A stretch of 64,000 nucleotides of DNA from Haliotis rubra (GCF_003918875.1 NW_025766936.1:620001-684000); one strand, 5' to 3'; shown: positions 1,879-43,908, numbered from the stretch's first letter. Numbers and translations are program-made. Notes: generated by a model not told the origin, from the sequence alone.

Positions 1879-3120
1879 ATGTATGTGCTGAGGCTGTTCA
1901 CAGAGCGAGGGGTGCGCCACCTCAATGTAGTGACATGTGGACTGTGTCTACTGTTGTTTCTGAAGGCGAGCAGAGGTCAGGACGATCACCATGTACTTCG
2001 ACTACACAATGACCTCATCAGAGACAACAACCCCAATGTCAGACCAGTCAAGAACAGTAGTGACTCTATCACGGTCTCTTTAGAATTTCACCTTCTCAGC
2101 ATGTCTAATTTTGATGAAGTTACTCAAACAGTGACAGCCAACGGGTTTTTCTTAGTTTCCTGGAAAGATGAGTTTCTAACCTGGAACGCCAGTGAGTATG
2201 GAGGAGTCAGTGCTATAAGTCCTGACTATGGGAAGGTTTGGAGACCTTACATCACTGTTCGCAACCGGGTGGATAGTTTTGAACCTCTGGGTCTCGATTT
2301 TGGGATCATGCAAGTTACCGCCCAAGGAATTGTAACATGGGCACCTGGCGATACCTTCAAGACTTTCTGCCAAATGGATGTTACCAACTTTCCTTTGGAT
2401 GAACAAGAGTGTACTTACGACACGTTCGTTTGGGGAAATATTCTGGAAGAAGTAGATTTAAAACCGACAAATAACTCTATTGACCTGACGTTATATAACT
2501 CGAACAGCCAATGGCATATCGCTAACTCATCTTCGCAAAGATATATTGTTCAGACCATTGGGTTTTCTTACGCAATGACATCCTTCAATATGACCCTAAA
2601 GAGAAAGCCATCTTTGGTGATTCTGACAACTCTCCTGCCTGTCCTGGTGCTGGGATTAGTGAATGTGGTGGTGTTCCTCATTCCTGTGGAGTCTGGAGAG
2701 AAGGTCTCCTTTGCCATCACGGTGTTGCTGTCTTTCACTGTTTCCCTGTCCTTCGTCACTGGACTGCTTCCACAGAATGCTGACTCGTTACCTATATTCA
2801 CTGTTTTCATTGTTGGCATGTTTGTGATGAGCTCTATCTACGTGTTCCTGGCCATCTGGATCGTGCAAGTGTTCCATCGAGACGCAGCCATCAAACCTGT
2901 TCCGTCGTGGATGGGACGTTTGACAAGGTCCTGGGAGAGAAGTATCTGTGGCACTCCTGTTGTTGGACGTAAGGAGAACCTGACATTGGCATCTTGCAAG
3001 GAACCATTAATGTCTTGGATAAGAGTTAGCAGAATGGCTGACAGAATTTTGTTCTGCCTGTTTTTCATTCTTTACATCCTAACCACGGTCATTGCATTTC
3101 TGAAGATAGCGTATTTCTAA
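1879..3120 (+). CDS. Intronless nicotinic acetylcholine receptor-like Cys-loop channel subunit, non-alpha type (copy 1)
   Basis: 413 aa single ORF with signal peptide, RPVKN motif, Cys-loop CQMDVTNFPLDEQEC (C-x13-C), M1-M3 with SGEKVSFAITVLLS, short M3-M4 loop and M4 after W..VSRMADR. No loop-C CC. Confidence 0.93.
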   Translation: MYVLRLFTERGVRHLNVVTCGLCLLLFLKASRGQDDHHVLRLHNDLIRDNNPNVRPVKNSSDSITVSLEFHLLSMSNFDEVTQTVTANGFFLVSWKDEFLTWNASEYGGVSAISPDYGKVWRPYITVRNRVDSFEPLGLDFGIMQVTAQGIVTWAPGDTFKTFCQMDVTNFPLDEQECTYDTFVWGNILEEVDLKPTNNSIDLTLYNSNSQWHIANSSSQRYIVQTIGFSYAMTSFNMTLKRKPSLVILTTLLPVLVLGLVNVVVFLIPVESGEKVSFAITVLLSFTVSLSFVTGLLPQNADSLPIFTVFIVGMFVMSSIYVFLAIWIVQVFHRDAAIKPVPSWMGRLTRSWERSICGTPVVGRKENLTLASCKEPLMSWIRVSRMADRILFCLFFILYILTTVIAFLKIAYF

Positions 3121-3379
3121 CATACAAACGTAAAGGGACGTGTTGTTGTCAGCATTCATTCTGGAAGATATAAGGTATACATTCATATGAAAAACGCAAC
3201 GTTTGGCGTATGATATCTAATTGTTGAGCATATATACTAAGCCAAGCATCGTGTGTTATCTTATGTCCCAAACACACCCATAAAAACGAAGTATGTTGAA
3301 ATCCGGTTTATGGACGTAAAGAGCGTATACTAAAACTGGATTAGGCATTAAGGTGCGCCTGGTGCACCCTCAACAATCG

Positions 3380-4335
3380 ACAGTAGTACGATTGGGTAAC
3401 GTTTTTATTTCACAGGGACTAACCGTCTGTATTGGAGCTTGTGTAATACCGTCTAAGCCCCCTCTCGCATTCACAATAGGAAGGAAACGTTGTCTCGTTG
3501 ACTGTCTAACACCCGTGAACACAGCGTTAGACAACCTGAGCTAATGATGTAGCAATATGACGCTCTTGAAGATTCTGGGGTTGACGTCCCAAATCACGAA
3601 GACTGCTTCCAAGAGCATCCAATATGTGTTCGATGGGACTGAAGTCAGGTGATCTAGATGGCCGGTCCATGACGTCAATAGCCGCATTTTGCAGGACATT
3701 TAGCCATCTGCAGATGAACTGTGCCCAGCGTTGACGTTCATCACGGTTTAGCTGTGTCAGAATTGGCTGAATATACGGACGTCGGGCAGGAAGATGGGCA
3801 GCTCGCAAGTGGTTTCCTATGTTCTGGACGACCTCTAAACAGTTCGTTACTGGTTGACGTTGGGATCGTAACATGATTACGTAAATGACGTAGTCAAATG
3901 CGATTGCCCTCTGTATGTGACGTCGGACGTGGCCGTCGTGGCCAGGGGCGATCAGTTGTTGTACCCGTTGGATTCACACGTGTAATCAGTTTTTTTAAAT
4001 TGTCCGTCTGCTGCACCTCATTTCACGTGCAAGACTGGCTAGGATGCCAATAGCAGTTCAAGTTCAACATTTTTAGTACTTAGCTTGAAAATTGTTTATC
4101 TCTCAAGGATTGTTAACGTGTTTTTTTCTATACTCAGCAGCAAATTCTTTTTCAGCGTCACGTTTTCACAATTAGCTTGGCGCATGCAGCTTGCTGGTGA
4201 ACGTGGCTCACCATAGTTGAAACTGCAGATTAGACCTGGCCATTATGGCATTCACTCACATCAACTACCTTGTACAACCCCCTTTTCAACATAATTCATT
4301 TCTCCAAGTGTGAAGTTTCATTTTCTGTTTAGTAT
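3380..4335 (-). mobile_element. Degraded, internally deleted Tc1/mariner element
   Basis: Fragments ARRPYIQPILT, WAQ and PSRSPDFSPIEHILDALG. The right end TGTGAAGTTTCATTTTCTGTTTAGTATA resembles the TIR of the 7284-8790 element. Left boundary uncertain. Confidence 0.8.
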
Positions 4336-5759: not shown

Positions 5760-6198
5760 GTGCCTGCGTATACTTGGGATACTCGCCGGTCCTGATGCCA
5801 TCGCAGTGCTGCGACAGTGCGGTGACTTTTTACCTCGTGTATCGTCAATATTGCCTGTCACCTGCACGTATAAATCTTTATCAGTGTGGTTCATATCTTG
5901 ACGGGACACTACCATCAGACCTGGAAAGCCAATGCCTTGAATTCGGAGAAGCAGAATGGTCGACATGATTATGTTCTGTCGCTTTCTCATATTTTAGATA
6001 TTAGTGAGTTTAGTTTTACGCCGCTTTTATCAATATTCCAGCAATATCACGACGGGAGACAGCAGAGATGGGTTTCACACATTGTAACTATGTGGGGACT
6101 CGAACCCGGGTCCTCGGCGTAACGAGCGAGCGCTTTAACTCCTAGGCTACCCCCATTTTACATATTAACCACATTCATTTCATCGCTAAACATTAGGA
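5760..6198 (+). pseudogene. Decayed nAChR-like relic (M2-M4 remnants) interrupted by a SINE
   Basis: Reads AIAVL..QCGDFLP..RDTTIRP..SRMVDMIMFCRFLIF[SINE]YILTTFISSL, versus copy 1 AITVL..QNADSLP..RDAAIKP..SRMADRILFCLFFILYILTTVIAFL. Contains stops and deletions. Confidence 0.7.
6003..6153 (-). mobile_element. tRNA-derived SINE
   Basis: Minus strand has an A box (GGGGTAGCCTAGGAG), a B box (GGGTTCGAGTCCC), core GATATTGCTGGAATATTGATAAAAGCGGCGTAAAAC and an ACTC-type tail. Imperfect TSD CATATTTTAGATATT / CATTTTTACATATT. Confidence 0.85.
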
Positions 6199-7283: not shown

Positions 7284-8790
7284 TACTGAGTCAAAAAAGA
7301 AACTTCACATTCTTTCTACAGGGCACTATAAAAGAACAAGAGATGGTAAGATGGTTAAATTGTTATTATTCCATTGCTGAGATCAGTGTGATGTACTCGA
7401 TACACTGACAGTGCCATAATCATTTCCATTAGGCTACACCGCCGTTCCAAAACATGGGTATACAGAATGTCAAGTCACAAGAATAAAAATGCGAAATTTC
7501 TCAGTTCAATATCGTGTATGGCCGCCCCGCGCATTCACCACTGCTAAACACCGTCTCCTCATCGACTGCCTGATGCTTGTGAACACGTGGTTGGGGATTC
7601 TGCGCCATTCCTCTTGCAAGGCAGCGCCAAGTTCCTGCAAATTCTGAGGTTGGTTCCTAAGACCACGAAGCCTTCCCCCAAGTGCATCCCAAACGTGCTC
7701 TATTGGATTAAAGTCAGGGGACCTCGATGGCCAGTCCATGACGTTGATTCCAGCGTTTTGAAGGGAATTTCGTGTCAACATCGCGGTATGCGGCCTAGCA
7801 TTATCATGCTGGAACTGTAGACCTGGCCATGAGCCGCCATGAAAGGAACGAGTTCAGGGGTGAGCACCTGGTCGCGGTAAGCAGCAGCTGTGAGGTTTCC
7901 ACGGAAGACCAGAAGTCGGGAACGGTTGTTCCCACAGAAAGCACCCCACACCATGCAACTTCCGCCCCCGAATCTGTCGACTTCCTGTACACAACATTGG
8001 GCATACCGTTCACGACGTCGTCTCCAGACTCTATGCCTCCCGTCCGCGAATCTGAGGGTAAACCTGGATTCATCGCTAAAGACGACTCGATTCCAGTCTC
8101 TCTGGGTCCATCGGAGGTGACGTTGGGCCCACAGCAGACGTTGACGTTGATAAAACGGCGTCAATATTGGCCCACGATATGGACGTCGAGAATGGAGATT
8201 GGCAGCCCGCAACCGATTTCGAATGGTCTGTGAGGACAGTCGACCTCTAAACATCTCAGCCCTGGTTCGTGTAGCCGGCAGAAATCTGTCACGTAGGTGA
8301 CTTAGGACGATTTGACGGTCTTCTGCTCGTGACGTCACACGTGGACGACACGACCTTGGGCGATCAGACGTGGTGCCAGACTGTTGAAGACGACCTCGCA
8401 AGTCATACACAGTACGATGGCTGCATCCCATTGCTCTTGCGACGTCAATAACTGATCTTCCCGCTTGCAACATGCCAACGGTACGTTCACGTTGCACATT
8501 TGACAATCGTGGCATTTCAAGTACCGTTAGAACTGTGGTTTAAAAGTGTTTTTTCACTTTCCTGAGGCCAATGCAAACACGTGCATATGAAGAAAACTTC
8601 GATGCGAAGATCACGAGATCGACTGCACGTGCAAAACCTGATTTGGCACTAACATCATTTGCACAACGAATGGATGGGTTTGAGTGGGTTTTGCTAACGT
8701 TTTTCTAGAGTCGAAAGATAGGGATCCCATTTCGTATACATAGATGTATCATCAAATTACATTTTGTGAAGTTTCTTTTTTGACTCAGTA
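7284..8790 (-). mobile_element. Full-length Tc1 (DD34E) transposon with perfect 26-bp TIRs and TA target duplication
   Basis: TIR TACTGAGTCAAAAAAGAAACTTCACA at 7284-7309 and its inverse at 8765-8790, both flanked by TA. Confidence 0.95.
7506..8515 (-). pseudogene. Tc1 transposase with a single frameshift near 7825
   Basis: Paired-like HTH N-terminus, VVFSDESRF, then after a 1-nt shift FQHDNARPH...WPSRSPDFNPIE with 34 residues between the second D and E. Ends GGHTRY. Confidence 0.9.
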
Positions 8791-10978: not shown

Positions 10979-12235
10979 TTAGAAACATGCTATCTTCAAA
11001 TACCCACATGTTACTGATGTGATGAAAAGCATCAAAAAGAAATATAAGAAAATCCTGTCAGCCATTCTGCTGACCTGCATCCATGTTATTGATGAGGGAT
11101 CCGATGTTTCCTTTGACACCCTTTCCTGAGTCGAAGTCTCCTGGATTACCACAGCAGGAGTGCCACAGATGCATCTCTCCCAGGACTTTGTCATGCGTCC
11201 CATCCACGTGGGAACAGGCCTGATGGCGGTGTCGCGATGGAACACTTGCACGATCCAGATGGTCAGGAACACGTAAATAGAGCTCATAATAAACAGGCCA
11301 ACAATGAACATAGTAAACACGGGTATACTGTCAGCGTTCTGTGGCAGCAGTCCAGTGACGAAGGACAGGGATACAGTGAAAGACAGCAACATCGTGATGG
11401 CAAAGGACACCTTCTCGCCAGACTCCACTGGAATGAGGAATACAACCACATTCGCTAATCCCAGCACCAGGACAGGCAAGACAGTTGTCAGTATCCCCAG
11501 AGATGGCTTTCTCTTCAGGGTCATGTTAAAGTATACAAAGGAAAAAGGTGTGTCGTTGATGTGATAGACAACTTTCTGAGATGATGAGTTAACTATATCC
11601 CACTGGCTGTTAGAGTTAAACAAATATAATCCTATATAGTTTTTAGTGGGTTTTAAATCTACTTCTTTCAGATCACTTCCCCACTCAAACGTCATATACG
11701 AACACTCCTGTTCATCCAAAGGAAAGTTGGTAACATCCATTTGACAGAAAGTTTTGAAGGTATCGCCTGTCGACCAAAACACAATTCCTTGGGATGTCAC
11801 TTTCATGATCCCAAAGTCGAGACCCAGAGGCTGAATCCGATCCACAACGTTGCGAATAGTGATGTCAGGTCTCCAAACCTTCCCATAGTCAGGCCTTATC
11901 TCACTGACTCCTCCATACTCGCTGGAGTTCCAGGTTAGAAACTCATCTTTCCAGGAAACTGAGAAAAACCCGTTAGCTGTCACTGTTTGAGTAACTTCAT
12001 CAAAATCAGACATGCTGAGAAGGTGAAGTTCCAATGAGACCGTGATTGTGTCACTGCTGTTCTTGACTGGTCTCACTCTTGGGTTATTGGTTTTGATAAT
12101 GTCATTGTGTAGTCGAAATACATGGTGGTCGTCCTGACCTCTAGATGCCCCCATGAATAACAGTAGACAAAGTCCACATGTCACTACCTTGAGGTTACGC
12201 ACCCCTCGCTCTGTGTACAGCCCCAACACATACAT
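10979..12235 (-). CDS. Intronless nAChR-like Cys-loop channel subunit (copy 2)
   Basis: 418 aa. Same architecture as copy 1: WRPDIT, CQMDVTNFPLDEQEC, GEKVSFAITMLLS. No loop-C CC. Confidence 0.93.
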   Translation of the reverse strand: MYVLGLYTERGVRNLKVVTCGLCLLLFMGASRGQDDHHVFRLHNDIIKTNNPRVRPVKNSSDTITVSLELHLLSMSDFDEVTQTVTANGFFSVSWKDEFLTWNSSEYGGVSEIRPDYGKVWRPDITIRNVVDRIQPLGLDFGIMKVTSQGIVFWSTGDTFKTFCQMDVTNFPLDEQECSYMTFEWGSDLKEVDLKPTKNYIGLYLFNSNSQWDIVNSSSQKVVYHINDTPFSFVYFNMTLKRKPSLGILTTVLPVLVLGLANVVVFLIPVESGEKVSFAITMLLSFTVSLSFVTGLLPQNADSIPVFTMFIVGLFIMSSIYVFLTIWIVQVFHRDTAIRPVPTWMGRMTKSWERCICGTPAVVIQETSTQERVSKETSDPSSITWMQVSRMADRIFLYFFLMLFITSVTCGYLKIACF

Positions 12236-13353
12236 TCTCTGTCTTGTACTTCACTTTAACTGTCCAGACTCGACTTGGTTGCTGGTCGGTGATGTCGAGT
12301 TTGTCTCGGTCAGGTTACATTGATTATTTGCTAACGAAGGTATTAGAAGAGTTTATTCATACATTCTTTGAATTGGGAAAGCCTGTAATAGAATTTATGT
12401 TCTTCATATTTCAATTTTACCTTGACATCTTTCCTTATATAAATACCATACGCTGTTCTGTGTAAACTGCCAACCCAATTAACGACACATTTGTTTGTAC
12501 TGATCCGTATTGGTCGATATCTTCCTTCACAGAATTAAAAACTATTTTAATAACCGCGAATTACAAGAAATATCCAATAATATGTAATAAACTGACACCT
12601 TCAGAAGTAAGTTAACTTTGATTTTTTTCCTTTGGACCACCAATGTTATTTTGATATTTTCAATGAACCAGTGAAAGGCAGTGTTAGCACCCGGCTCACC
12701 TCAGGGATTCCTGACTCAGCCCTGCAGTGTATACATGCACGGTATGTAGTTTCAGATTTCAGCAACATTGTGATATCAAATAGGTTATGTTAAAACAAAC
12801 ATACTGATAAAAACAAATAAGAGTTGACAAGAACTGTTTCAAAAATGAAATGACTCGAGGTCAAAGCAGATATTCAATATCCTGTCCAGATTGTAGTACT
12901 GGTAGCGCTCTTTGATATACGCGTGTTGTATGTTTCAACTTTATGTGTTGCATCCGTGCTGTTTCGAACCTTCAAGACATTAGGACCCAAGGGAAAGTCT
13001 GTGAGAAGAACGCGGGGCAAGTGAGCATTAACTCTTGTGGTGTTTGTATTTGTGTCAGTCATTAACACCTGTTTCTTTAACCCATCCCGATACATCCCGA
13101 TACGTCTCTATATCTCATTTCACATGAGTGAAAATCCACTTAACTGTAGATGCTGACATTCTTCAGCTAATTAGTTCAAGAGGTTTGACGAAACAGAACC
13201 AGATACTTGCACCAACCCAATAAGAACCAAACTATGACGAGTAAAGCCATGTCTCCCCTGTAGACAGGAAATGCTGACCTGGGCAACAGGCGGCTCGAAA
13301 ACGCGGTCCTGTTACTTAACTTAACACCAATTCCTTCCTTTAGGATGATTAAA

Positions 13354-13500: not shown

Positions 13501-13595
13501 ATTGCCCCAACAATATCAAATGTATGTTAGACATCAGACAAAAGTTAAGAGATAGTGACTATATTGAATATGTGAAAACGTTTGATATAACTGGT

Positions 13596-13779: not shown

Positions 13780-14214
13780 CTATAACTGGGGTGACAGACC
13801 CTTGGTTGGACAATGTAAATCCCTTGTATGTAAATACGGCAAATACGGTAAATATTTCCAGACAGTTTGTTATACTCACGAGATGCTGTTATCACTTGTG
13901 TTGGAGACATAAACATCGGACATGGACGAGAGGAAGTTTTGCTCGAGACAGTATTTGCGGATGTATTGAAGGGCAGAGGCAATGGTGCTCAGGATGGGAT
14001 TTTACGTGCGATTGTTTCAGCCGTTCATCAAGCGATAAAACTGTAAACACCTTTGTGTAGAGCCCGTCAATATTGCTGACTGGTATGCACATTTTGTTAC
14101 TTTCATCAACTGTACCAGGCGAGTTTCCAAGAGGATTCGGTGACGATAACAGATTCACGTATATATACACTTGGTCACTTGCAAAAACAAATTAGTGTAT
14201 TAAGACTGTGTACT

Positions 14215-17200
14215 GTGACGTCACCACGCTCTGTCAATGTTCTATCACTACATCATCTGGGATGTCACCACGCTCTGTCAATGTTCTGTCACTACAACAT
14301 CTGGGATGTCACCACACTCTGTCAATGTTCTGTCACTACAACATCTGGGATGTCACCACACTCTGTCAATGTTCTATCACTACATCATCTGGGATGTCAC
14401 CACACTCTGTCAATATTCTGTTACTACATCATCCGGGATGTCACCACACTCTGTCAATGTTCTGTCACTACATCATCTGGGATGTCACCACACTCTGTCA
14501 ATGTTCTGTCACTACATCATAAGGGATGTCACCACGCTCTGTCAATGTTCTGTCACTACATCATCTGGGATGTCACCACACTCTGTCAATGTTCTGTCAC
14601 TACATCATCTGGGATGTCACCACGCTCTGTCAATGTTCTCTCACTACATCATCTGGGATGTCACCACGTTCTGTCAGTGTTCTGTCACTACATCATCTGG
14701 GATGTCACCACACTCTGTCAATGTTCTGTCGCTACATCATCTGGGATGTCACCACACTCTGTCAATGTTCTGTCTCTACATCATCTGGTATGTCACCACG
14801 TTCTCTCAGTTTTCTGTCACTACATCATCTGGGATGTCACCACGTTCTGTCAGTGTTCTGTCACTACATCATCTGGGATGTCACCACACTCTGTCAATGT
14901 TCTGTCACTACATCATCTGGGATGTCACCACGCTCTGTCAATGTTCTGTCACTACATCATCTGGGATGTCACCACGCTCTGTCAATGTTCTGTCACTACA
15001 TCATCTGGGATGTCACCACGCTCTGTCAGTGTTCTGTTACTACATCATCTGGGATGTCACCACACTCTGTCAATGTTCTGTCACTACATCATCTGGGATG
15101 TCACCACACTCTGTCAATGTTCTGTCACTACATCATCTGGGATGTCACCACGCTCTGTCAATGTTCTGTCACTACATCATCTGGGATGTCACCACACTCT
15201 GTCAATGTTCTGTCACTACATCATCTGGGATGTCACCACACTCTGTCAATGTTCTGTCACTACATCATCTGGGATGTCACCACACTCTGTCAATGTTCTG
15301 TCACTACATCATCTGGGATGTCACCACACTCTGTCAATGTTCTGTCACTACATCATCTGGGATGTCACCACACTCTGTCAATGTTCTGTCACTACATCAT
15401 CTGGGATGTCACCACACTCTGTCAATGTTCTGTCACTACATCATCTGGGATGTCACCACGCTCTGTCAATGTTCTGTCACTACATCATCTGGGATGTCAC
15501 CACACTCTGTCAATGTTCTGTCACTACATCATCTGGGATGTCACCACACTCTGTCAATGTTCTGTCACTACATCATCTGGGATGTCACCACACTCTGTCA
15601 ATGTTCTGTCACTACATCATCTGGGATGTCACCACGTTCTGTCAATGTTCTGTCACTACATCATCTGGGATGTCACCACACTCTGTCAATGTTCTGTCAC
15701 TACATCATCTGGGATGTCACCACACTCTGTCAATGTTCTGTCACTACATCATCTGGGATGTCACCACACCTCTGTCAATGTTCTGTCACTACATCATCTG
15801 GGATGTCACCACACTCTGTCAATGTTCTGTCACTACATCATCTGGGATGTCACCACACTCTGTCAATGTTCTGTCACTACATCATCTGGGATGTCACCAC
15901 ACTCTGTCAATGTTCTGTCACTACATCATCTGGGATGTCACCACACTCTGTCAATGTTCTGTCACTACATCATCTGGGATGTCACCACACTCTGTCAATG
16001 TTCTGTCACTACATCATCTGGGATGTCACCACACTCTGTCAATGTTCTGTCACTACATCATCTGGGATGTCACCACACTCTGTCAATGTTCTGTCACTAC
16101 ATCATCTGGGATGTCACCACGCTCTGTCAATGTTCTGTCACTACATCATCTGGGATGTCACCACACTCTGTCAATGTTCTGTCACTACATCATCTGGGAT
16201 GTCACCACGCTCTGTCAATGTTCTGTCACTACATCATCTGGGATGTCACCACGTTCTGTCAGTGTTCTGTCACTACATCATCTGGGATGTCACCACACTC
16301 TGTCAATGTTCTGTCACTACATCATCTGGGATGTCACCACACTCTGTCAATGTTCTGTCTCTACATCATCTGGGATGTCACCACGTTCTGTCAGTGTTCT
16401 GTCACTACATCATCTGGGATGTCACCACGTTCTGTCAGTGTTCTGTCACTACATCATCTGGGATGTCACCACACTCTGTCAATGTTCTGTCACTACATCA
16501 TCTGGGATGTCACCACGCTCTGTCAATGTTCTGTCACTACATCATCTGGGATGTCACCACGTTCTGTCAATGTTCTGTCACTACATCATCTGGGATGTCA
16601 CCACGCTCTGTCAGTGTTCTGTTACTACATCATCTGGGATGTCACCACACTCTGTCAATGTTCTGTCACTACATCATCTGGGATGTCACCACGTTCTGTC
16701 AATGTTCTGTCACTACATCATCTGGGATGTCACCACGCTCTGTCAATGTTCTGTCACTACATCATCTGGGATGTCACCACACTCTGTCAATGTTCTGTCA
16801 CTACATCATCTGGGATGTCACCACACTCTGTCAATGTTCTGTTACTACATCATCTGGGATGTCACCACACTCTGTCAATGTTCTGTCACTACATCATCTG
16901 GGATGTCACCACACTCTGTCAATGTTCTGTTACTACATCATCTGGGATGTCACCACACTCTGTCAATGTTCTGTCACTACATCATCTGGGATGTCACCAC
17001 ACTCTGTCAATGTTCTGTCACTACATCATCTGGGATGTCACCACGCTCTGTCAATGTTCTGTTACTACATCATCTGGGATGTCACCACACTCTGTCAATG
17101 TTCTGTCACTACATCATCTGGGATGTCACCACACTCTGTCAATGTTCTGTTACTACATCATCTGGGATGTCACCACACTCTGTCAATGTTCTGTCACTAC

Positions 17201-26813: not shown

Positions 26814-28071
26814 TCAGTAAGTTGCTATCTTAAGATAACCGATTACTACTGCCATGATGAAAAGCATGAAAAACACCAAAAAGACAATCATGTCAGCCAT
26901 TCTGCTGACCTGCATCCATGTAATTGATGAGGGTTCCGATGTTTCCTTCGACATCCTTTCCTGAGTCGAGGTCTCCTGGGTTCCCACAGGAGGAGTGCCA
27001 CAGAAGCATCTCTCCCCAGGACCTTGTCATACGTCCCATCCACGTGAGAACAGGCTTGATGGCGGCGTCGCGATGGAACACGTGCATGATCCAGATGGTC
27101 AGGAACACGTAGATAGAGCTCATCACAAACAGACCAACAATGAACAAAGTAAACACAGGTATACTGTCAGCGTTCTGTGGCAGCAGTCCAGTGACGAAGG
27201 ACAGGGATACAGTGAAAGACAGCAACACACTGTTGGCAAAGGACAGCTTCTCGCCAGACTCCACAGGAATGAGGAACACCACCACATTCACTAATCCCAG
27301 CACCAGGACAAGCAGGATAGTTGTCAGTATCGCCAAAGATGGCTTTCTCTTCAGGGTCATGTTAAAGTATACAAAGCAAAAAGGTGTGTCGGTGATGTGA
27401 AAGACAACTTTCTGAAATGATGAGTTAACTATATCCCACTGGCTGTTAGAGTTAAACAAATATAATCCTATATAGTTTCTAGAGGGTTTTAAATCTACTT
27501 CTTTCGGATAACTTCCCCACTCAAACATGATATATGTACTCTCCTGTTCATCCAAAGGAAAGTTGGTAACATCCATCTGGCAGAAAGTTTTGAAGATATC
27601 GCCAGGTGACCAAGTCACAATTCCTTGGGCGGTCACTTTCATGATCCCAAAGTCGAGTCTCAGAGGCGGAATACGATCCACCACGTTGCGAATAGTGATG
27701 TAAGGTCTCCAAATCTTCCCATAGTCAGGACAAATTTCACTGACTCGCCCATACTCACTGGCGTTCCAGGTTAGAAACTCATCTTTCCAGGTCACGAAGA
27801 AAAAAACTGTGGCTGTCACTCGCTGAGTGACTTCACCAAAATCGGACATGCTGACAAGATGAAGTTCCAGTGAGACCGTGATTGTGTCACTGCTGTTCTT
27901 GACTGGTCTGACATTGGGGTTGTTGTTTCTGATGAGGTCATTGTGTAGTCGAAGTACATGGTGGTCGTCCTGACCTCTAGCTGCCCCCAGGAACAACAGT
28001 AGACAAAGTCCACATGTTGCTCCCTTGAGGTGACGCAAGCCTAGCTCTGTGTACAGCCCCAACACATACAT
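26814..28071 (-). pseudogene. nAChR-like copy 3: frameshifted, chimeric, second Cys-loop Cys lost
   Basis: Extra C at about 27014 (TCTCCCCAGG vs TCTCCCAGG in copies 2 and 4). Removing it gives 1257 nt (418 aa) ending GYLKIATY. Also DEQESTY (C to S), DFGEV and ANSVLL substitutions. Confidence 0.85.
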
Positions 28072-29939: not shown

Positions 29940-30838
29940 TGGCACTGTGGAACGATTGCCCTAGTGTCACCTTCATGATGGTGGCGCTGTGGAATGATTG
30001 AGCTAGTGTCCACTTCACGATGGTGGCGCTGTGGAATGATTGCTCTAGTGTCAACTTCACGATGGTGGCGCTGTGGAATGATTGCTCTAGTGTCAACTTC
30101 ACGATGGTGGCACTGTAAAATGTTTGCCCTAGTGTCAACTTCACGATGGTGGCGCTGTGGAATGATTGAGCTAGTGTCAACTTCACGATGGTGGCGCTGT
30201 GGAATGATTGAGCTAGTGTCAACTTCACGATGGTGGCGCTGTGAAATGATTGAGCTAGTGTCAACTTCACGATGGTGGCGCTGTGAAATGATTGCCCTAG
30301 TGTCAACTTCACGATGGTGGCGCTGTTGAATGATTGAGCTAGTGTCAACTTCACGATGGTGGTGCTATGGAATGATTGCCCTAGTGTCAACTTCACGATG
30401 GTGGCGCTGTTGAATGATTGCCCTAGTGTCAACTTCACGATGGTGGCGCTGTTGAATGGTTGAGCTATTGTCAACATCACGATGGTGGCGCTATGGAATG
30501 ATTGCCCTAGTGTCAACTTCACGATGGTGGCGCTGTTGAACTATTGACCTAGTGTCAACTTCACGATGGTGGCACTGTGAAATGATTGCCCTAGTGTCAA
30601 CTTCACGATGGTGGCGCTGTGGAATGATTGAGCTAGTGTCCACTTCACGATGGTGGCACTGTGAAGTGATTGCCCTAGTGTCAACTTCACGATGGTGGCA
30701 CTATGAAATGATTGCCCTAGTGTCAACTTCACGATGGTGGCGCTGTGAAATGATTGCCCTAGTGTCAACTTCACGATGGTGGTGCTATGGAATGATTGCC
30801 CTAGTGTCAACTTCACGATGGTGGCGCTGTGGAATGAC
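29940..30838. repeat. 42-bp minisatellite (about 21 copies)
   Basis: Unit TAGTGTCAACTTCACGATGGTGGCGCTGTGGAATGATTGCCC. Confidence 0.95.
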
Positions 30839-30867
30839 TTAAATCATACAGTTAAATGGGTGAAATA

Positions 30868-33049: not shown

Positions 33050-35254
33050 GTGCCGACATACAGCCACAGCAATCAGCCCATCAGCTCATCTAACCTTGGG
33101 ACAGGTGCAAACATACAGCCACAGCAATCAGCCCATCAGTTCATCTAACCTTTGGACAGGTGCCGACATACAGCCACAGCAATCAGCCCATCAGCTCATC
33201 TAACCTTGGGACAGGTGCCGACATACAGCCACAGCTTTCAGCCCATCAGCTCATCTAACCTTGGTACAGGTGTCGACATACAGCCACACCAATCAGACCA
33301 TCAGCTCATCTAACCTTGGGACAGGTGCCCACATACAGCCACAGCAATCAGCCCATCAGCTCATCTAACCTTTCGACAGGTGCCGACATACAGCCACACC
33401 AATCAGACCATCAGCTCATCTAACCTTGGGACAGGTGCCGACATACAGCCACAGCAATCAGCCCATCAGCTCATCTAACCTTTCGACAGGTGCCGACATA
33501 CAGCCACAGCTTTCAGCCCATCAGCTCATCTAACCTTGGGACAGGTGCCGACATACTACCACAGCAATCAGCCCATCAGCTCATGTAACCTTTGGACAGG
33601 TGCGAACATACAGCCACACCAATCAGCCCATCAGCTCATCTAACCTTGGGACAGGTGCCGACATACAGCCACAGCTTTCAGCCCATCAGCTCATCTAACC
33701 ATGGGACACGTGGCCACATACAGCCACACCAATCAGCCCATCAGTTCATCTAACCTTTGGACAAGTGTCGACATACAGCCACAGCAATCAGCCCATCTGC
33801 TCATCTAACCTTTGGACAGGTGTCGACATACAGCCACAGCAATCAGCCCATCAGCTCATCTAAGCTTGGTACAGGTGTCGACATACAGCCACAGCAATCG
33901 GCCCATCAGCTCATCTAACCTTGGGACAGGTGTCGACATACAACCACACCAATCAGCCCATCAGCTCATCTAACCTTTCGACAGGTGCCGACATACAGCC
34001 ACAGCAATCAGCCCATCAGCTCATCTAACCTTTGGACAGGTGCCGACATACAGCCACAGCAATCAGCCCAACAGCTCAACTAACCTTTGGACAGGTGTTG
34101 ACATACAGCCACAGCAATCAGCCCATCAGCTCATCTAACCTTTCGACAGGTGCCGACATACAACCACAGCTATCGGCCGATCAGCTCATCTAACCTTTCG
34201 ACAGGTGCCGACATACAGCCACAGTAATCAGCCCATCTAACCTTGGTACAGGTGTCGACATACAGCCACACCAATCAGCCCATCAGCTCATCTAACCTTG
34301 GGACAGGTGCAAACATACAGCCACAGCAATCAGCCCATCAGCTCATCTAACCTTTGGACAGGTGCCGACATACAACCACACCAATCAGCCCATCAGCTCA
34401 TCTAACCTTGGGACAGGTGCAGACATACAGCCACAGCTATCAGCCCATCAGCTCATCTAACCTTGGGACAGGTGCCGACATACAGCCACAGCTATCAGCC
34501 CATCAGCTCATCTAACCTTGGGACAGGTGCCGACATACAGCCACAGCTTTCAGCCCATCAGCTCATCTAACCTTTGGACAGGTGCCGACATACAGCCACA
34601 GCAATCAGCCCATCAGCTCATCTAACCTTGGGACAGGTGCCAACATACAGCCACAACAATCAGCCCATCAGCTCATCTAACCTTTGGACAGGCGTTGACA
34701 TACAGCCACAGCAATCAGCCCATCAGCTCATCTAACCTTTGGACAGGTGCCGGCATACAGCCACACCAATCAGACCATCAGCTCATCTAACCTTGGGACA
34801 GGTGCCGACATACAGCCACAGCAATCAGCCCATCAGCTCATCTAACCTTGGGACAGGTGCCGACATACAGCCACAGCTATCAGCCCATCAGCTCATCTAA
34901 CCTTTGGACAGGTGCCGACATACAGCCACAGCTATCAGCCAATCAGCTCATCTAACCCTGGGACAGGTGTCGACATACAGCCACAACAATCAGCCCATCA
35001 GCTCATCTAAGCTTGGTACAGGTGTCGACATACAACCACAGCAATCAGCCCATCAGCTCATCTAACCTTTGGACAGGTGCCGACATACAGCCACAGCAAT
35101 CAGCCCATCAGCTCATCTAACCTTGGGACAGGTGCCGACATACAGCCGCAGCGCTCAGCCCATCAGCTAATCTAACCTTGGGACAGGTGCCGACATACAG
35201 CCACCGCAATCAGCCCATCAGCTCATCTAACCTTGGGACAGGTGTCGACATACA
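33050..35254. repeat. 55-bp minisatellite (about 40 copies)
   Basis: Unit ACAGGTGCCGACATACAGCCACAGCAATCAGCCCATCAGCTCATCTAACCTTGGG. Confidence 0.96.
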
Positions 35255-36824
35255 GCAATCAGGTGACAGGTGATCGCGTCACACTACAAACACATGCACG
35301 TATCAGTAAACGGAATTTACTTCAGTCAGATACATTCCTACAGATGTTATATTGCCGACATGTGTATCTGTCAATAACAACGTTACATACTACCGAAGTG
35401 AGACAAAATAATTACAGCTGACAAGCGGATTCGTCATACCAACGTGATGTGCTATGTTGAACGACCAATGATATTTAGCTGTATAGGATACACAAAGCAA
35501 GGCTATACTCCTAATGGGATACATCAGATGTAATGTGATACCCGGAACAGGGGGGTACTTCTCTTGAACATCCGACGATACAAATAACAGCTGTACATTA
35601 CGTCGACAGAAATACATTTGGTCACGTTGCTCCATCAGACAAATGTAGTACCAAATGATGAATATATAGCTACGAGACCAGCGATGTATAGTAAGGACAT
35701 TTACAAATCAATAACAAATATAGCTCCTTGGATTTACTTACTTTGGAGCCTTGTGCATCTCTCACATATCTCATGAAAGTAGTAATGGTATTAGTTAATA
35801 TGAATCATATCACTGCTAGTCGAATGCTCTTCGACTGGAAGTACTGGGAGGTCATTAAATTTCGATATACTCATCAAAAATCCTATTTTCGTAGATTAAA
35901 TAATATCACTTAGGTACAATGAATATCAAAACAGAAGAACCCTTTGTTCAAACAGTCAGAGAAACAGAAAATTTTGTGGCCTGAACTAAATAATTTGAAA
36001 GGTTCACTGTGACTGACATTATGTGAATTTAAATGTACGTCACATGTAGCTGACAAGTCGTGATTCACATTTAACGGTCAGTAAACACAACTCATGTGCC
36101 ATTTTACGGAAAGAATGACATTTTCGTGCTCTTTATTATGGTGCATTGCCTACTGATAGAGGTACCTGGCGAGTTTAGTGCGGATTTTTTCTGCACTGTT
36201 GGTAGACACCATTTCCATCTAAATATCAACAGCAACCAAAAAGACATGTCGACACGAAGCACTCGTGCTCTGTATTTCGGTAGCGTTTATCAATATCCAT
36301 AACACTGTTCCTCTCACGCTGACACAAGTGAACATGTGGTTTTACAGCAACTAACGTACTCCAGTAGGGGTATTCTCGGGACGTGGACATCCTAAGTCGT
36401 GTAAAAGCAAGTAATTTGAAGTAATTTGTAATCTAACTGTAGCAACAATTTCCTGACAGTGATTATTACTCACCTAGCGTGTACACTTATCGGAGTGAAC
36501 ACATTTTATGAAATCAGTCAACACTACAAGCGATTTCTGAGTGAACTCACTCACCTATCATAGTCACATGCTAACCACGCTTACCAGAGTGAACTACCAG
36601 AGTGAACAGACTCACGAAACCTTCACAATTCCGGTAACAGTTAGGATTTTAACACTTCCCGACCAGTTAATCCCTTACTTAAAAACAGACGACATCAAAG
36701 GAAACCCGTCTGTCCACGTCCTGAGAAGACAGACAAATATTTTCCTTAAGTCTCACCTCATGTAAAAGTACAGAAGTGGCATATATGATAAAAGGTACAC
36801 TATGGATTTAGCCGCATAAAATAA

Positions 36825-39370: not shown

Positions 39371-40609
39371 TCAGTAAGTTGCTATCTTAAGATAACCGAT
39401 TATTACTGTCATGATGAAAAGCATGAAAAAAAAAAGAAAGACAATCCTGTCAGCCATTCTGCTGACCTGCATCCATGTAATTGATGAGGGTTCCGATGTT
39501 TCCTTTGACATTCTTTCCTGAGTCGAGGTCTCCTGGGTTCCCACAGGAGGAGTGCCACAGAAGCATCTCTCCCAGGATCGTGTCATACGTCCCATCCACG
39601 TGGGAACAGGCCTGATGGCGGCGTCGCGATGGAACACGTGCATGATCCAGATGGTCAGGAACACATATGTTGAACTCATAATAAACAGACTAACATTTAA
39701 GATAGTAAACACAGGTATACTGTCAGCGTTCTGTGGCAGCAGTCCAGTGACGAAGGATAGTGATACAGTGAAAGACAGTAACACCGTGATGGCAAAGGAC
39801 AGCTTCTCGCCAGACTCGACAGGAATGAGGAATACCACCATATTCACTAATCCCAGGACCAGGACAGGCAGGAGAGTTGTCAGTATCACTAATGTCGACT
39901 TTCTCTTCAGTGTAATATTGAAGTTTACAAGTGAAAATGATATGCCCATGTTTTCAAGCACAAGTCTTTCAGCAGATGAGTTAACTATATTCCACTGGCT
40001 GTTGGAGTTAAATAAATTTAATCCTATGGAGTTATTAATCGGTTTTAAATCAAGTTCATTCTGAGCATAACCCCAGTCTAACGTGATGTAAGAACACTCC
40101 TGTTTGTCCAATGGGTAGTTGGTAACATCCATTTTGCAAAAAGTCTTGAATGTATCTCCTGGCAACCAAGTCACAACTCCATTGGCTGTCACTTTCATGA
40201 TCCCAAAGTCCAATCCCAGAGGATCAACACTGTCCACCTGGTTGCGAATTGTGATGTAAGGTCTCCAAACCTTCCCATAATCAGGACGAATTTCACTGAC
40301 TCCTCCATACTCACTGGCGTTCCAGGTTAGAAACTCATCTTTCCAGGTCACAAAGAAAAAGCCGTTAGCTGTCACAGTCTGAGTAACTTCATCGAAGTCG
40401 GACATGCTGAGAAGGTAAAGTTGTAATGAGACCGTGATAGTGTCACTGCTGTTCTTGACTGGTCTGACCAGTGGGTTGTTGTTTTTGAAGATGTCAGTGT
40501 ATAGCTGATGTATATGATGGTCATCTTGACCCTTGACGGCCAACAGTATGAACAGCAGACACAAACAAGGAAGTGTCAAGTTCAGGGGGCCCTCTTTTGC
40601 CAAGTACAT
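39371..40609 (-). CDS. Intronless nAChR-like Cys-loop channel subunit (copy 4)
   Basis: 412 aa with signal peptide, CKMDVTNYPLDKQEC, GEKLSFAITVLLS and M4. No loop-C CC. Confidence 0.93.
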   Translation of the reverse strand: MYLAKEGPLNLTLPCLCLLFILLAVKGQDDHHIHQLYTDIFKNNNPLVRPVKNSSDTITVSLQLYLLSMSDFDEVTQTVTANGFFFVTWKDEFLTWNASEYGGVSEIRPDYGKVWRPYITIRNQVDSVDPLGLDFGIMKVTANGVVTWLPGDTFKTFCKMDVTNYPLDKQECSYITLDWGYAQNELDLKPINNSIGLNLFNSNSQWNIVNSSAERLVLENMGISFSLVNFNITLKRKSTLVILTTLLPVLVLGLVNMVVFLIPVESGEKLSFAITVLLSFTVSLSFVTGLLPQNADSIPVFTILNVSLFIMSSTYVFLTIWIMHVFHRDAAIRPVPTWMGRMTRSWERCFCGTPPVGTQETSTQERMSKETSEPSSITWMQVSRMADRIVFLFFFMLFIMTVIIGYLKIATY

Positions 40610-41184: not shown

Positions 41185-41848
41185 TGTGTTGGCGTGGTTT
41201 GAGGTGGCTTTGTGTTGGTGTGGTTTGAGGTGGCTTTGTGTTGGCGTGGTTTGAGGTGGCCTAGAGTTGGTGTGCTTTGAAGTGGCTTTGTGTTGGCGTG
41301 GTTTGGAGGGGCTTTGTGTTGGCGTGGTTTGAGGTGGTCTAGAGTAGGCGTGGTTTGAAGTTGCTTTGTGTTGGCGTGGTTTTAGGGGGCTTTGCGTTGG
41401 CGTGGTTTGAGGTGGCTTTGTGTTGGCGTGGTTTGAGGTTGCTTTGTGTTGGCGTGGTTTGAGGTTGTTTTGTGCTGGCGTGGTTGGAGGTGGCTTTGTG
41501 TTGGTGTGGTTGGAAGTGGCTTTGTGTTGGTGTGGTTTGAAATGGCTTTGTGTTGGCTGGTATGAGGGGGCTTTGTGTTGGTGTGGTTGGAGGTGGCTTT
41601 GTGTTGGCTGGTATGAGGTGGCTTTGTGTTGGTGTGGTTGGAGGTGGCTTTGTGTTGGTGTGGTTGGAGGTGGCTTTGTGTTGGCTGGTTTGAAATGGCT
41701 TCGTGTAGGCTAGTATGAGGGGGCTTTGTGTTGGTGTGGTTGGAGGTGGCTTTGTGTTGGTGTGGTTTGAGGTGGCTTTCTGTTGGTGTGGTAGGAGGTG
41801 GCTTTGTGTTGGCGTGGTTTGAGGTGGCTTTGTGTTGGTGTGGTTTGG
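41185..41848. repeat. 26-bp G/T-rich minisatellite (about 25 copies)
   Basis: Unit GTGTTGGCGTGGTTTGAGGTGGCTTT with variants. Confidence 0.93.
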
Positions 41849-42675
41849 CCACGAAGCTCAATAATCCAACAGTTAAGGTAGTGATGCTTACTGTAGGAAC
41901 AACTACAAAGTTCCACATAAGACTGTTCACTTTCCGCACACATTAATGTTAACGTTTCGTTGTTTTCCTGTAGTCTTGTCCCCTCATCCTTTAGGACTGC
42001 CAACAAATATAAATGCTTGAATAACTTGCTTGAATATGAATAAACAAGCTGTTGCATATCATCCAGGTGTACAAGAAAATATTCTTTCGCCTATTGAATA
42101 TATATTCTTCTCGTCATATTATCAAAACAGATAAGTCCCATGTTTGTTGAGAGCATATATTTATTCAGTTAATTTTGAAATCCACAACAGAAAGACCTGT
42201 CTTCAGGTTTTAAAGTCAGAATTCGATAGTACCGATATATGGTTTTGAGAATACTTCATAAGCCTTATACGTGGCACTATTTGATACCAAGTTCTTTGAT
42301 CATACAGTGTTTGAGACCTGGACACCATGGGTTGAGTCCAGTCCTCTGATCCTTGATGTTTGGATAACGGCAAGGGAAGAGCGCACCAGATGAGATTAAC
42401 GTTTTGTTCTTGGGCACAAACCTTGGCTTGAGACGATATTCAGCCCTACACCTACACCTAGTCACATTATTCTAACCCAACAACAAACAAAACGAAAGTA
42501 AACACACAAACCTCTGCTCTATTACATATGCTTTCGGTTTTTCTGCGAACTCACATAGATTTAACACAAAGGTATTATTACTCGTGTCACTATATTTCAC
42601 TATACTTTACACTTTCACTTGACGGGTACCGTTAATCAAGACCATATGACCTACGTGTGCGTCTATGCCATTATG

Positions 42676-43908
42676 TCAAAATAATATCTTGAACACAGCG
42701 ACAGCCATCATTGATACGGTGAGGATAAGAAATGTCCAGAAGAAAAACCTGTCCATGGCCTCACTCACTCTTTTCCAATTCATCTCACGTCCACGCATAG
42801 ACTTGTCAATGTCCCGACTAGAAGATCTGTCCGACCCAGCCTGACTGTCAGTCGCGTGTATTCTGATACTCTCACAACAACCCTTCTGGCCACCCGCTAA
42901 TCTACTCACCCAGAGAGGGACGGGCCGCCTGCTTGAGTCTCTGTGGAATACCTTAATAATCCAGATCGTCAGCAGTACATAGAGAGAGCTCATGAGGAAC
43001 AGCCCCGCCATGAGCAGGGTGAACACTGACAGGCTGTCAGCGCTTTGGGGCAGCATGTTGGTGATAAACGACATGAACACAGCAAACGACAGCAGCACGG
43101 TGATGGTGAAGGACAGCTTCTCCCCGGACTCCACCGGGATGAGGAACACTAAGATGTTGAGGATGGAGAGAAGCAGCACGGGCATCACCACGGTCAGGAT
43201 CTTCATTGACGGCCTCCTTGTCAGCTGGAGAGAGAAGGTTAGATGGGGGATCTCATGGTATAACACCTGTTTTGTGTGCCGAGTGGCCGAGGTGTTGGTG
43301 ATGCCCCATTCACTGTTCACGTTATAAATGTCGAGACCGATGGAGTTGTTGACTGGCAAGAGATCAATGGTGCTGATGGTGTCAGCCCAAACAAACACAT
43401 TGAAGGAACATGTCTGAACATCGAAGGGGAACTTGGTAACATCCATTTTACAAGTAGTCTTGAATGTGTCTCCGGGATACCAGGTGAGAGTTCCACTGAA
43501 GTAGAGAACTAAGAGGCCGAAATCCAAGCCCAAAGGTTTCATCTTGTCCACTGTATTCTGCACCGCTATGCTCGGCTTCCACACTCGTTCAAATGCTGGC
43601 CTCATGCTCAACAAGCCGCTGTACAGAGCCGGGTTCCAGGTCAGGATTTCGTCTCTCCATGTCACCGTCATGTAGCCGGTGGAAGCCAGAACCTCGGAGA
43701 CTTCATCAAATTCTGTAATTGCCACAAGGTTAAAGGTCACATAGACTTGGAGAACATGTGTTGTGTTACGAACAGGGCGGATGTTGGGGTTGTTGTGCTG
43801 GATGATGTCACTGTACAGCTGTTGGTGAAGGGTGTAGTCGTCAACACAGACACCGACGTCGACGATTGCCAGAAGAGTTACAACCAAATATATCCTGTCT
43901 TCTAGCAT
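42676..43908 (-). CDS. Intronless nAChR-like Cys-loop channel subunit (copy 5, most divergent)
   Basis: Probable ATG at 43908 (MLEDRIYLVVTLLAIV). CKMDVTKFPFDVQTC, GEKLSFTITVLLSFAVFM and WKRVSEAMDR. No loop-C CC. Confidence 0.92.
   Translation of the reverse strand: MLEDRIYLVVTLLAIVDVGVCVDDYTLHQQLYSDIIQHNNPNIRPVRNTTHVLQVYVTFNLVAITEFDEVSEVLASTGYMTVTWRDEILTWNPALYSGLLSMRPAFERVWKPSIAVQNTVDKMKPLGLDFGLLVLYFSGTLTWYPGDTFKTTCKMDVTKFPFDVQTCSFNVFVWADTISTIDLLPVNNSIGLDIYNVNSEWGITNTSATRHTKQVLYHEIPHLTFSLQLTRRPSMKILTVVMPVLLLSILNILVFLIPVESGEKLSFTITVLLSFAVFMSFITNMLPQSADSLSVFTLLMAGLFLMSSLYVLLTIWIIKVFHRDSSRRPVPLWVSRLAGGQKGCCESIRIHATDSQAGSDRSSSRDIDKSMRGREMNWKRVSEAMDRFFFWTFLILTVSMMAVAVFKILF

What the first reader, a model, noticed from the sequence alone, without database searches (positions are those of the whole stretch)
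1879..43908. Tandem cluster of intronless, ACh-site-deficient Cys-loop channels: a candidate chemotactile-receptor-like sensory system
Seen in sequence: five full-length single-exon nAChR-like genes (one frameshifted) plus a relic lie within 42 kb, while the neighbouring gene is intron-rich. All five lack the loop-C Cys-Cys pair, replace the loop-A Tyr of WxPDxxLYN (WRPYITVRN, WKPSIAVQN), and replace the loop-D Trp with F or Y. They keep the loop-B Trp and the cation-selective M2 GEK ring, and have short M3-M4 loops. Established knowledge: cephalopod chemotactile receptors are intronless, tandemly clustered nAChR derivatives that have lost ACh-binding residues, and nAChR-like expansions are known in other molluscs. 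Inference: this is a birth-and-death cluster of ionotropic chemoreceptors for non-ACh ligands, possibly evolved in parallel in a non-cephalopod lineage.
Basis: partly seen in the sequence, partly recalled or inferred. Interest (0 to 1): 0.85.

Follow-up and report, generated by a model that had tools for sequence, protein, structure and literature searches.

The report
Abalone orphan nicotinic-like channel array
This is the end of a 117-kb tandem array of intron-free genes in blacklip abalone that encode nicotinic-receptor-like cation channels without an acetylcholine site; the genes are kept by selection, but such arrays are already known in molluscs and a taste or smell role is untested.

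Summary
The window (Haliotis rubra scaffold C2046:620001-684000) holds five single-ORF Cys-loop receptor genes, A to E. One of them (C) is frameshifted. There is also a short relic at 5803-6015.

All five lack the loop-C Cys-Cys pair, the loop-A Tyr and the loop-D Trp. All keep the loop-B Trp, the Cys-loop and the GEK cation ring.

They are the downstream third of a 14-locus array: eight more copies lie upstream of the window. The genome holds at least 100 further single-ORF relatives in other arrays.

A, B, D and E each have a syntenic 1:1 ortholog in H. asinina. Ortholog dN/dS is 0.25.

Loops B and C hold the most amino-acid change among paralogs, with a tree-based omega of 0.7-0.8, against 0.27 for the rest of the ligand-binding domain and 0.16 for M2. 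Between orthologs these loops are still constrained (0.45).

C is a decayed B/D chimera, which supports birth-and-death by unequal crossing-over.

I read the genes as working, non-cholinergic ligand-gated cation channels with an unknown ligand. No RNA evidence could be obtained, so the chemosensory idea is untested. There is no special kinship to cephalopod chemotactile receptors.

The kind is already published (Jiao 2019; MolluscaGenes 2026), and this scan has already flagged other arrays of the same kind in this genome.

The parts
1879..3120 (+). Gene A: intact single-ORF nAChR-like subunit, 413 aa. It is the only copy on the + strand.
   Evidence: Pfam LBD 3.9e-40 and TM region 6.1e-14. Best solved relative is alpha7, E 3.8e-47. 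1:1 H. asinina ortholog P0011.
5803..6015 (+). Relic: a degraded fragment covering the post-M3 and M4 segments, with stop codons.
   Evidence: tblastn E 0.08-0.25 and blastn 76% identity over 50 nt, E 8e-4. The translation shows RDTTIRP and IRRSRMVDMIMFCRFLIF interrupted by stops.
10979..12235 (-). Gene B: intact single-ORF subunit, 418 aa.
   Evidence: Pfam. Ortholog P0005 in H. asinina. It shows the fastest ortholog divergence in loops B and C: 19 nonsynonymous against 5 synonymous changes.
26817..28071 (-). Pseudogene C: a B/D chimera with a +1 frameshift at 27010-27021 and its second Cys-loop Cys changed to Ser (27538-27540).
   Evidence: It is B-like from -350 to about nt 950, and D-like from about nt 980 to 80 bp past the stop. 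It has the longest branch in the tree. H. asinina has no gene called between its B and D orthologs.
39371..40609 (-). Gene D: intact single-ORF subunit, 412 aa.
   Evidence: Pfam. Ortholog P0002 is 89% identical and syntenic. The AF2 model has pLDDT 81.7 and an nAChR fold, with alpha7 at Z 30.6.
42676..43908 (-). Gene E: an intact, older paralog, 410 aa, about 43-46% identical to A-D.
   Evidence: Ortholog P0020 is 90% identical and lies next to the D ortholog in H. asinina. H. rufescens co-orthologs P0021 and P0022 are 79% identical.

Best explanation
The window holds the downstream end of a 14-locus tandem array in Haliotis rubra. The genes have a single coding exon and encode divergent subunits of nicotinic-receptor-type pentameric ligand-gated channels.

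Shown:
- The proteins keep everything needed to assemble, gate and conduct cations. This covers the signal peptide, the Cys-loop with FP(L/F)D, the pre-M1 Arg, the M2 -1' Glu in GEK, the 9' Leu and the M2-M3 Pro.
- They have lost the residues that bind acetylcholine: the loop-A Tyr, the loop-C Tyr and Cys-Cys, and the loop-D Trp.
- The genes are maintained by purifying selection and retained as orthologs between abalone species.
- The array grows and decays by unequal crossing-over.

Inferred:
- They form homo- or heteropentameric cation channels.
- These are opened by one or more ligands other than acetylcholine, bound at the remodelled interface pocket.
- The principal face of that pocket (loops B and C) differs between paralogs and would set ligand selectivity.

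The ligand and the tissue are unknown.
For: - Domain and fold.
- ACh-site residues, with canonical controls read in the same alignment.
- Gating and pore motifs conserved across all intact copies. Tree-based omega is 0.16 for M2 and 0.14 for the Cys-loop.
- Whole-gene omega is 0.40 among paralogs and 0.25 between H. rubra and H. asinina orthologs at dS 0.28.
- 1:1 orthologs and synteny.
- Loops B and C carry 2.6-fold more nonsynonymous change than the rest of the LBD (Fisher p 1e-9).
- Their paralog-specific sequences recur in the orthologs. Ortholog omega in these loops is 0.45.
- Array structure, young copies with shared flanks and the chimeric pseudogene.
Against: - No expression data of any kind was obtained. 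All database members of the family come from genome annotation only.
- No ligand is known.
- Omega in loops B and C (0.7-0.8) is statistically compatible with near-neutral drift of a disused pocket (p for omega below 1 is 0.07-0.10).
- The related orphan Alpo4 has resisted every attempt to open it (PMC10338036).
- The loop-A position is Arg in most copies, so the pocket differs from the hydrophobic pocket of CRT1.
Confidence: 0.62

Rival explanations
1. Exteroceptive chemoreceptors. The array would encode ionotropic taste or smell receptors. They would be expressed in the tentacle, lip, foot, osphradium or larval sensory cells, tuned to environmental molecules, and evolved in parallel with cephalopod chemotactile receptors.
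For: - The genomic and sequence syndrome matches that of CRs: no introns, tandem arrangement, no ACh residues, cation pore.
- Variation is concentrated in pocket loops B and C and is paralog-specific.
- The array turns over by birth-and-death.
- A short M3-M4 loop with no long synaptic-anchoring region.
- CRs are documented nAChR derivatives with a pocket under positive selection (PMC11526382; 10.1101/2025.03.03.641191).
Against: - There is no tissue data.
- No site shows significant positive selection.
- A, B, D and E are stable 1:1 orthologs with omega 0.25. This does not show the fast turnover I would expect of an environmental chemoreceptor family.
- Similarity to CRT1 and CRB1 is no higher than to alpha7.
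- In bivalves, similar expanded genes are expressed in gill, gonad and embryos and respond to stress (PMC6896357).
- Arg at the loop-A site argues against a CR-type hydrophobic pocket.
Confidence: 0.22
2. Accessory or structural subunits. They would bind no ligand themselves, co-assemble with ACh-binding alpha subunits encoded elsewhere, and tune the kinetics, trafficking or conductance of cholinergic receptors.
For: - They have no Cys-Cys pair, as in non-alpha subunits.
- The pore and gating elements are highly conserved.
- The complementary-face loops D and F are conserved, with omega 0.23-0.24.
- RefSeq names them nAChR subunits.
Against: - The complementary-face Trp55, which such subunits contribute to ACh binding, is replaced by Phe or Tyr.
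- Twelve or more near-redundant accessory subunits in a single array is hard to rationalise.
- Loops B and C are still constrained between orthologs. That constraint is not expected for a principal face that is never used.
- The clade has no relative above 38% identity outside Haliotis, so it does not look like a conserved subunit class.
Confidence: 0.12
3. Non-functional retrocopies drifting toward pseudogenes.
For: Three of the 14 loci are dead. No transcript evidence was found. Intron-poor nAChR genes in bivalves are more often silent (PMC6896357).
Against: - Eleven intact ORFs of about 412 codons.
- Omega is 0.25-0.40, with p below 1e-50 for omega below 1 in the LBD.
- Syntenic orthologs are kept across species at dS 0.28.
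- The one true pseudogene, C, is clearly different: it has a long branch, a lost Cys and a frameshift.
Confidence: 0.04

Closest known systems
Intronless, tandemly arrayed nAChR expansions of lophotrochozoans (Jiao et al. 2019, PMC6896357)
   Same: Single coding exon. Tandem arrays of up to 12 genes. Lineage-specific duplication. Loss of principal ACh-binding residues in most members. The typical LBD plus transmembrane architecture. That paper also counts gastropods (Lottia 64 genes, Aplysia 127).
   Different: That study did not include abalone or any vetigastropod. This clade has no relative above 38% identity outside Haliotis. The present work adds ortholog conservation, per-loop selection contrasts and a crossover-chimera pseudogene.
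Cephalopod chemotactile receptors CRT1 and CRB1 (van Giesen 2020; Allard 2023; Kang 2023, as summarised in PMC11526382 and 10.1101/2025.03.03.641191)
   Same: nAChR-derived. Intronless. Clustered. ACh residues lost. Cation channel. Pocket residues are the most variable part of the protein.
   Different: There is no evidence of clade membership. CRT1 gives Z 22.0 with 26% identity and CRB1 gives Z 22.3 with 21%, against alpha7 at Z 30.6 with 29%. The ten nearest relatives that I looked up are all gastropod. The loop-A site is Arg, Gln or Trp rather than part of a hydrophobic aromatic pocket. Sensory expression and ligands are unknown here.
Alpo4, the orphan nAChR-like receptor of Alvinella pompejana (PMC10338036; PDB 8bx5)
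   Same: A lophotrochozoan receptor with no Cys-Cys tip on loop C, a conserved loop-B Trp, no response expected to ACh, and an unknown ligand. It matches protein A at E 6e-37 and the model of D at Z 24.9.
   Different: Only 23% identity. Alpo4 keeps more of the aromatic box and is not reported as part of a tandem array. It comes from an annelid, not a gastropod.
Vertebrate alpha7 nAChR
   Same: It is the best solved sequence and structure match (E 3.8e-47, Z 30.6, 29-31% identity). It shares the fold, the GEK ring and the Cys-loop.
   Different: Alpha7 has the full aromatic box and the Cys-Cys pair. Full-length alpha7 chains in the PDB are about 480-512 aa, against about 412 aa here. From general knowledge, not tested here: alpha7 has a much longer M3-M4 loop (here about 50 residues) and its gene has many exons.

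Membership tests
Cys-loop pentameric ligand-gated ion channel, nAChR/5-HT3 cationic branch | Neur_chan_LBD plus a four-helix transmembrane domain | tested here: met
   Pfam PF02931 and PF02932 in all five ORFs. The AF2 model shows a beta-sandwich followed by M1-M4. nAChR chains match at TM 0.77-0.80 and Z up to 30.6.
Cys-loop pentameric ligand-gated ion channel, nAChR/5-HT3 cationic branch | Cys-loop (C-x13-C with FPxD) and a cation-type M2 (-1' Glu in GEK, no PAR motif) | tested here: met
   CQMDVTNFPLDEQEC and VESGEK are present in all intact copies. Only pseudogene C has lost the second Cys.
Acetylcholine-gated nAChR alpha subunit | Loop-C YxCC motif and the aromatic box (Tyr93, Trp149, Tyr188/195, Trp55 in alpha7 numbering) | tested here: not met
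   There is no CC. Tyr93 is Arg, Gln or Trp. Tyr188 is Val or another residue. Trp55 is Phe or Tyr. Only Trp149 is kept in all copies. In gene A the Tyr195 position is still Tyr; I did not tabulate it for the other copies. Canonical controls in the same alignment show the full set.
Lophotrochozoan intronless tandem nAChR expansion (Jiao 2019) | Single-exon coding region | tested here: met
   Complete ORFs with a stop just upstream of each ATG. The H. asinina gene models have a span equal to their CDS length. A 5'-UTR intron cannot be excluded without RNA.
Lophotrochozoan intronless tandem nAChR expansion (Jiao 2019) | Tandem array with lineage-specific duplicates | tested here: met
   14 loci lie within 117 kb. 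The upstream copies have dS of about 0.15, below the ortholog dS of 0.28, and still share flanks. At least 100 further single-ORF relatives lie in other arrays.
Cephalopod chemotactile receptors (CRs) | Belongs to the CR clade in a phylogeny | tested here: inconclusive
   CR sequences could not be fetched for a tree. As proxies, no CR chain is among the best 60 PDB sequence hits. Structure-based identity to CRT1 and CRB1 is 26% and 21%, no higher than the 29% to alpha7. The nearest relatives are all gastropod.
Cephalopod chemotactile receptors (CRs) | Expressed in a peripheral sensory epithelium | not testable with these tools
   No RNA run holds D or E. The runs I laid behave as whole-genome DNA. 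Sample names are coded.
Cephalopod chemotactile receptors (CRs) | Gated by poorly soluble environmental ligands and not by ACh | not testable with these tools
   This needs electrophysiology.
Cephalopod chemotactile receptors (CRs) | Pocket residues under positive selection | tested here: inconclusive
   Loops B and C have omega 0.69-0.79 by tree counts and 1.0-1.3 in paralog sliding windows. No LBD site reaches p<0.05 for excess nonsynonymous change, and omega above 1 is not supported.

The most novel reading that the evidence does not exclude
A clade so far seen only in Haliotis of ionotropic chemoreceptors that arose from nAChRs independently of cephalopod CRs. The paralog-specific loops B and C, together with an Arg, Gln or Trp at the loop-A site, would tune each channel to a different waterborne or surface cue. 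Candidate cues are algal, biofilm or conspecific molecules, possibly polar or anionic rather than hydrophobic.
Probability: 0.2. Interest if true: 0.7.

Novelty: new member of a known kind. Interest (0 to 1): 0.33.

Why it matters
If one of these channels were de-orphanised, it would show what the very large molluscan expansions of nicotinic-like receptors are for. That question has been open since 2019. It would also test whether turning neurotransmitter receptors into sensors happened more than once in molluscs.

This array is a good entry point. It offers four intact genes with clear orthologs in other abalone, a conserved channel core, and pocket loops that differ between paralogs. That is an ordered set for expression and ligand screening.

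As it stands, it is one more example of a published phenomenon, and one of many such arrays in this genome.

Tried and rejected
1. Transcription evidence. The look-up of sequencing runs for D and E listed no run on record as RNA. I laid X1, X3, X9 and X4 on 42100-48000.
   - At first I read the cover over E (depth 16-60, with a hole upstream) as RNA. I rejected that reading for three reasons: the contig totals (1.08-1.48 Gb) equal the genome size, unique-region depth is uniform, and a repeat reaches a depth of about 1e5.
   - These runs are therefore whole-genome DNA, so there is no expression evidence either way.
   - X4 (guessed to be RNA) matched only 18-31-nt repeat words.

2. Fetching cephalopod CR sequences for a tree. 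Three word-index searches returned no cephalopod protein. The exhaustive search gives no names, and the ten nearest single-domain hits that I named were all gastropod. The primary CR papers and a review are not held. I used structure-based comparison instead.

3. Site-wise positive selection by parsimony counting on 17 sequences. Only one site, in the signal peptide, reached p<0.05, and no pocket site did. Power is low, and gene conversion (low dS in the ICD and M1-M3) would confound site models.

4. The ESM Atlas look-up only confirmed the family.

5. The long ORFs at 14140-21202 are artefacts of a 44-bp satellite.

6. A retroposition signature was not sought further. The older paralogs share no flank beyond about 30 bp upstream of the ATG, so nothing informative remains.
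Full report
**What is in the window**

Mechanical ORF listing and tblastn find five paralogous ORFs:

| Gene | Coordinates | Strand | Length |
|---|---|---|---|
| A | 1879-3120 | + | 413 aa |
| B | 10979-12235 | - | 418 aa |
| C | 26893-28071 | - | 392 aa |
| D | 39371-40609 | - | 412 aa |
| E | 42676-43908 | - | 410 aa |

- All five carry Pfam Neur_chan_LBD (E 1e-37 to 1e-43) and Neur_chan_memb.
- The best solved relative is human alpha7 nAChR, at E 3.8e-47.
- An AlphaFold model of D (pLDDT 81.7) has the nAChR subunit fold: TM 0.77-0.80 to muscle and alpha7 chains and Z 30.6 to alpha7.
- A-D are 70-81% identical to each other. E is 43-46% identical to them.
- Each gene is one uninterrupted ORF from signal peptide to M4. 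A, B, D and E have an in-frame stop 3-7 codons upstream of the ATG.
- The H. asinina gene models span exactly their CDS length.
- The coding region therefore has no intron. A 5'-UTR intron cannot be excluded.

**Dead copies**

C has a +1 G insertion at 27010-27021, and its reading frame resumes in another frame down to 26817. Its second Cys-loop Cys is Ser (TGT to AGT at 27538-27540). It has the longest branch in the family tree. The insertion lies in a G-run of a Nanopore-based assembly, so it needs confirmation, but the other defects point the same way.

The relic at 5803-6015(+) is weak but recognisable. It shows post-M3 and M4 motifs interrupted by stops.

**The residue claims hold**

I read the residues against alpha7 and in one 58-sequence alignment. 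In that alignment the canonical controls show Trp55, Asp89, Tyr93, Trp149, Tyr151 and YxCC.

- All copies have Phe or Tyr at Trp55.
- All have Arg at Tyr93, except Gln in E and Trp in two upstream copies.
- None has a Cys-Cys pair, and Tyr188 is lost.
- Trp149 is kept in every copy.
- VESGEK, the 9' Leu, the FP(L/F)D Cys-loop, the pre-M1 Arg and the M2-M3 Pro are all kept.
- The M3-M4 segment is about 48-57 residues.

**Where it comes from and how big it is**

The window is C2046:620001-684000 of a 1.378-Gb assembly in 2,855 contigs. This matches the published Haliotis rubra assembly (PMC6774278). Four upstream copies are letter-identical to RefSeq H. rubra proteins named 'neuronal acetylcholine receptor subunit alpha-6/7-like'.

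Fetching the flanks shows 14 loci between 547 and 664 kb, and none in the 27 kb before or the 40 kb after. The 14 loci are 11 intact genes, C, a truncated and frameshifted copy at 579.4-580.3 kb, and the relic.

Genome-wide, at least 101 scored single-ORF matches (702 candidates) sit in many other arrays. This scan has already flagged several of these arrays, with the same conclusion.

**Evolution**

A tree with other Haliotis proteins gives 1:1 H. asinina orthologs for A, B, D and E. The upstream copies form younger, species-specific groups.

The H. asinina locus is syntenic: A(+), B, D, E, then a multi-exon LDLa-CUB-trypsin gene. H. asinina has no gene called between its B and D orthologs, where H. 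rubra has C.

C is a chimera. It is 87-96% identical to B from 350 bp upstream of the ATG to about nt 950. It is then 93-100% identical to D as far as 80 bp past the stop. This is the product expected from unequal crossing-over, or conversion, between B and D.

The young upstream copies still share 0.4-2.5 kb of flank. The old paralogs share only the CDS.

Birth-and-death is therefore supported, though the four intact genes in the window are old and stable.

**Selection**

Nei-Gojobori estimates:

| Comparison | Region | omega |
|---|---|---|
| Ten close paralogs | whole gene | 0.40 |
| H. rubra / H. asinina orthologs, dS 0.28 | whole gene | 0.25 |
| Same orthologs | LBD outside loops A-C | 0.15 |
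| Same orthologs | M1-M3 | 0.18 |
| Same orthologs | loops B + C | 0.45 |

Counts of changes on a 17-sequence tree:

| Region | omega |
|---|---|
| M2 | 0.16 |
| Cys-loop | 0.14 |
| Loop D | 0.23 |
| Loop F | 0.24 |
| Rest of LBD | 0.27 |
| Loop B | 0.69 |
| Loop C | 0.79 |

- Loops B and C are enriched for nonsynonymous change relative to the rest of the LBD (odds ratio 2.6, p 1e-9).
- In sliding windows among paralogs they reach 1.0-1.3.
- The loop B and C sequences are paralog-specific and recur in the orthologs. For example, YDTFVWGNILEEVDL is identical in A and its ortholog.
- No pocket site is individually significant for positive selection.

I read this as a conserved channel core with a principal-face pocket that diverged between paralogs and has since been held, though loosely. 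A largely disused pocket is not excluded.

**Relation to known receptors**

The nearest proteins outside Haliotis are 33-38% identical. They come from Gigantopelta, Lottia, Patella, Littorina, Nucella, Batillaria and Physella. They also lack the ACh signature where I checked.

Structure-based comparison against one chain per PDB sequence cluster:

| Chain | Z | Identity |
|---|---|---|
| alpha7 | 30.6 | 29% |
| Alpo4 | 24.9 | 23% |
| squid CRB1 | 22.3 | 21% |
| octopus CRT1 | 22.0 | 26% |

There is no sign of special kinship with cephalopod chemotactile receptors. CR sequences could not be fetched, so no proper tree was built.

**Literature**

- Jiao et al. 2019 (PMC6896357) described massive, mostly intronless, tandem nAChR expansions in molluscs. 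Most members lack the principal ACh residues, and expression is diverse and partly non-neuronal.
- The Alpo4 paper (PMC10338036) shows that a lophotrochozoan orphan of this type is a real channel protein that no tested ligand opens.
- A 2026 preprint (PMC13174522) reports a CR-like clade in gastropods, bivalves and chitons. It explicitly suggests that divergent nAChR clades may add an ionotropic component to gastropod chemosensation. It does not mention Haliotis.
- I found no paper on this abalone family.

**Expression**

Expression is not resolved. No RNA run holds D or E. The runs I laid are whole-genome DNA by contig total, uniform depth and repeat depth. Every database member of the family comes from genome annotation, and none from run assemblies. 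That is weak evidence for low or restricted expression, and nothing more.

**Verdict**

The genes are real and constrained, and they almost certainly do not bind acetylcholine in the canonical way. Their most likely identity is a set of orphan, non-cholinergic ligand-gated cation channel subunits. The chemosensory reading is a fair hypothesis (about 0.2), but it is untested and already in print as an idea. I classify the finding as a new member of a known kind.

Noticed in passing
window 14213-20939: A 44-bp satellite of about 153 copies at 94% matches, with strong strand skew. It leaves all three + frames open and yields spurious ORFs of up to 2321 aa. H. asinina has no counterpart of this stretch between its B and D orthologs.
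   Followed up: partly
window 29940-30837, 33050-35256, 41185-41847, 54305-55592, 57435-58375, 60833-62574: Six further minisatellites with periods of 26-62 bp and 15-40 copies lie between and beside the receptor genes. The 26-bp array sits between D and E.
   Followed up: no
window 7775-8515(-), 3527-3874(-), 49413-49901(-): Tc1/mariner-type transposase remnants. The first is a 246-aa ORF with HTH_Tnp_Tc3_2, the second is a weaker copy, and the third is a DDE_3 fragment inside the neighbouring gene.
   Followed up: partly
window about 44900-53300(-): The neighbouring multi-exon gene has CUB-domain exons at 51281-51913 and 52144-52656. Its H. asinina ortholog is an LDLa-CUB-CUB-LDLa-trypsin protein of at least 749 aa, lying directly upstream of the E ortholog.
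   Followed up: partly
window 46040-46830: A very high-copy repeat. Contig depth reaches about 1e5 in runs where unique sequence has depth 16-56.
   Followed up: no
window 25531-25955 and 26361-26807: The 3' flank of pseudogene C is duplicated about 850 bp downstream at 79% identity. Both copies resemble the 3' flank of the D ortholog in H. asinina (L013:11248-11662).
   Followed up: partly
G000:C2046:579367-580313(-): A truncated, frameshifted copy covering residues 95-410, outside the window. It is a second dead member of the array.
   Followed up: partly
window 1861-1878 and 12236-12253: A and B share the 18 bp immediately upstream of the ATG (translated *STRQR), although all other flanking similarity is gone. 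This may be a conserved leader or initiation context.
   Followed up: no
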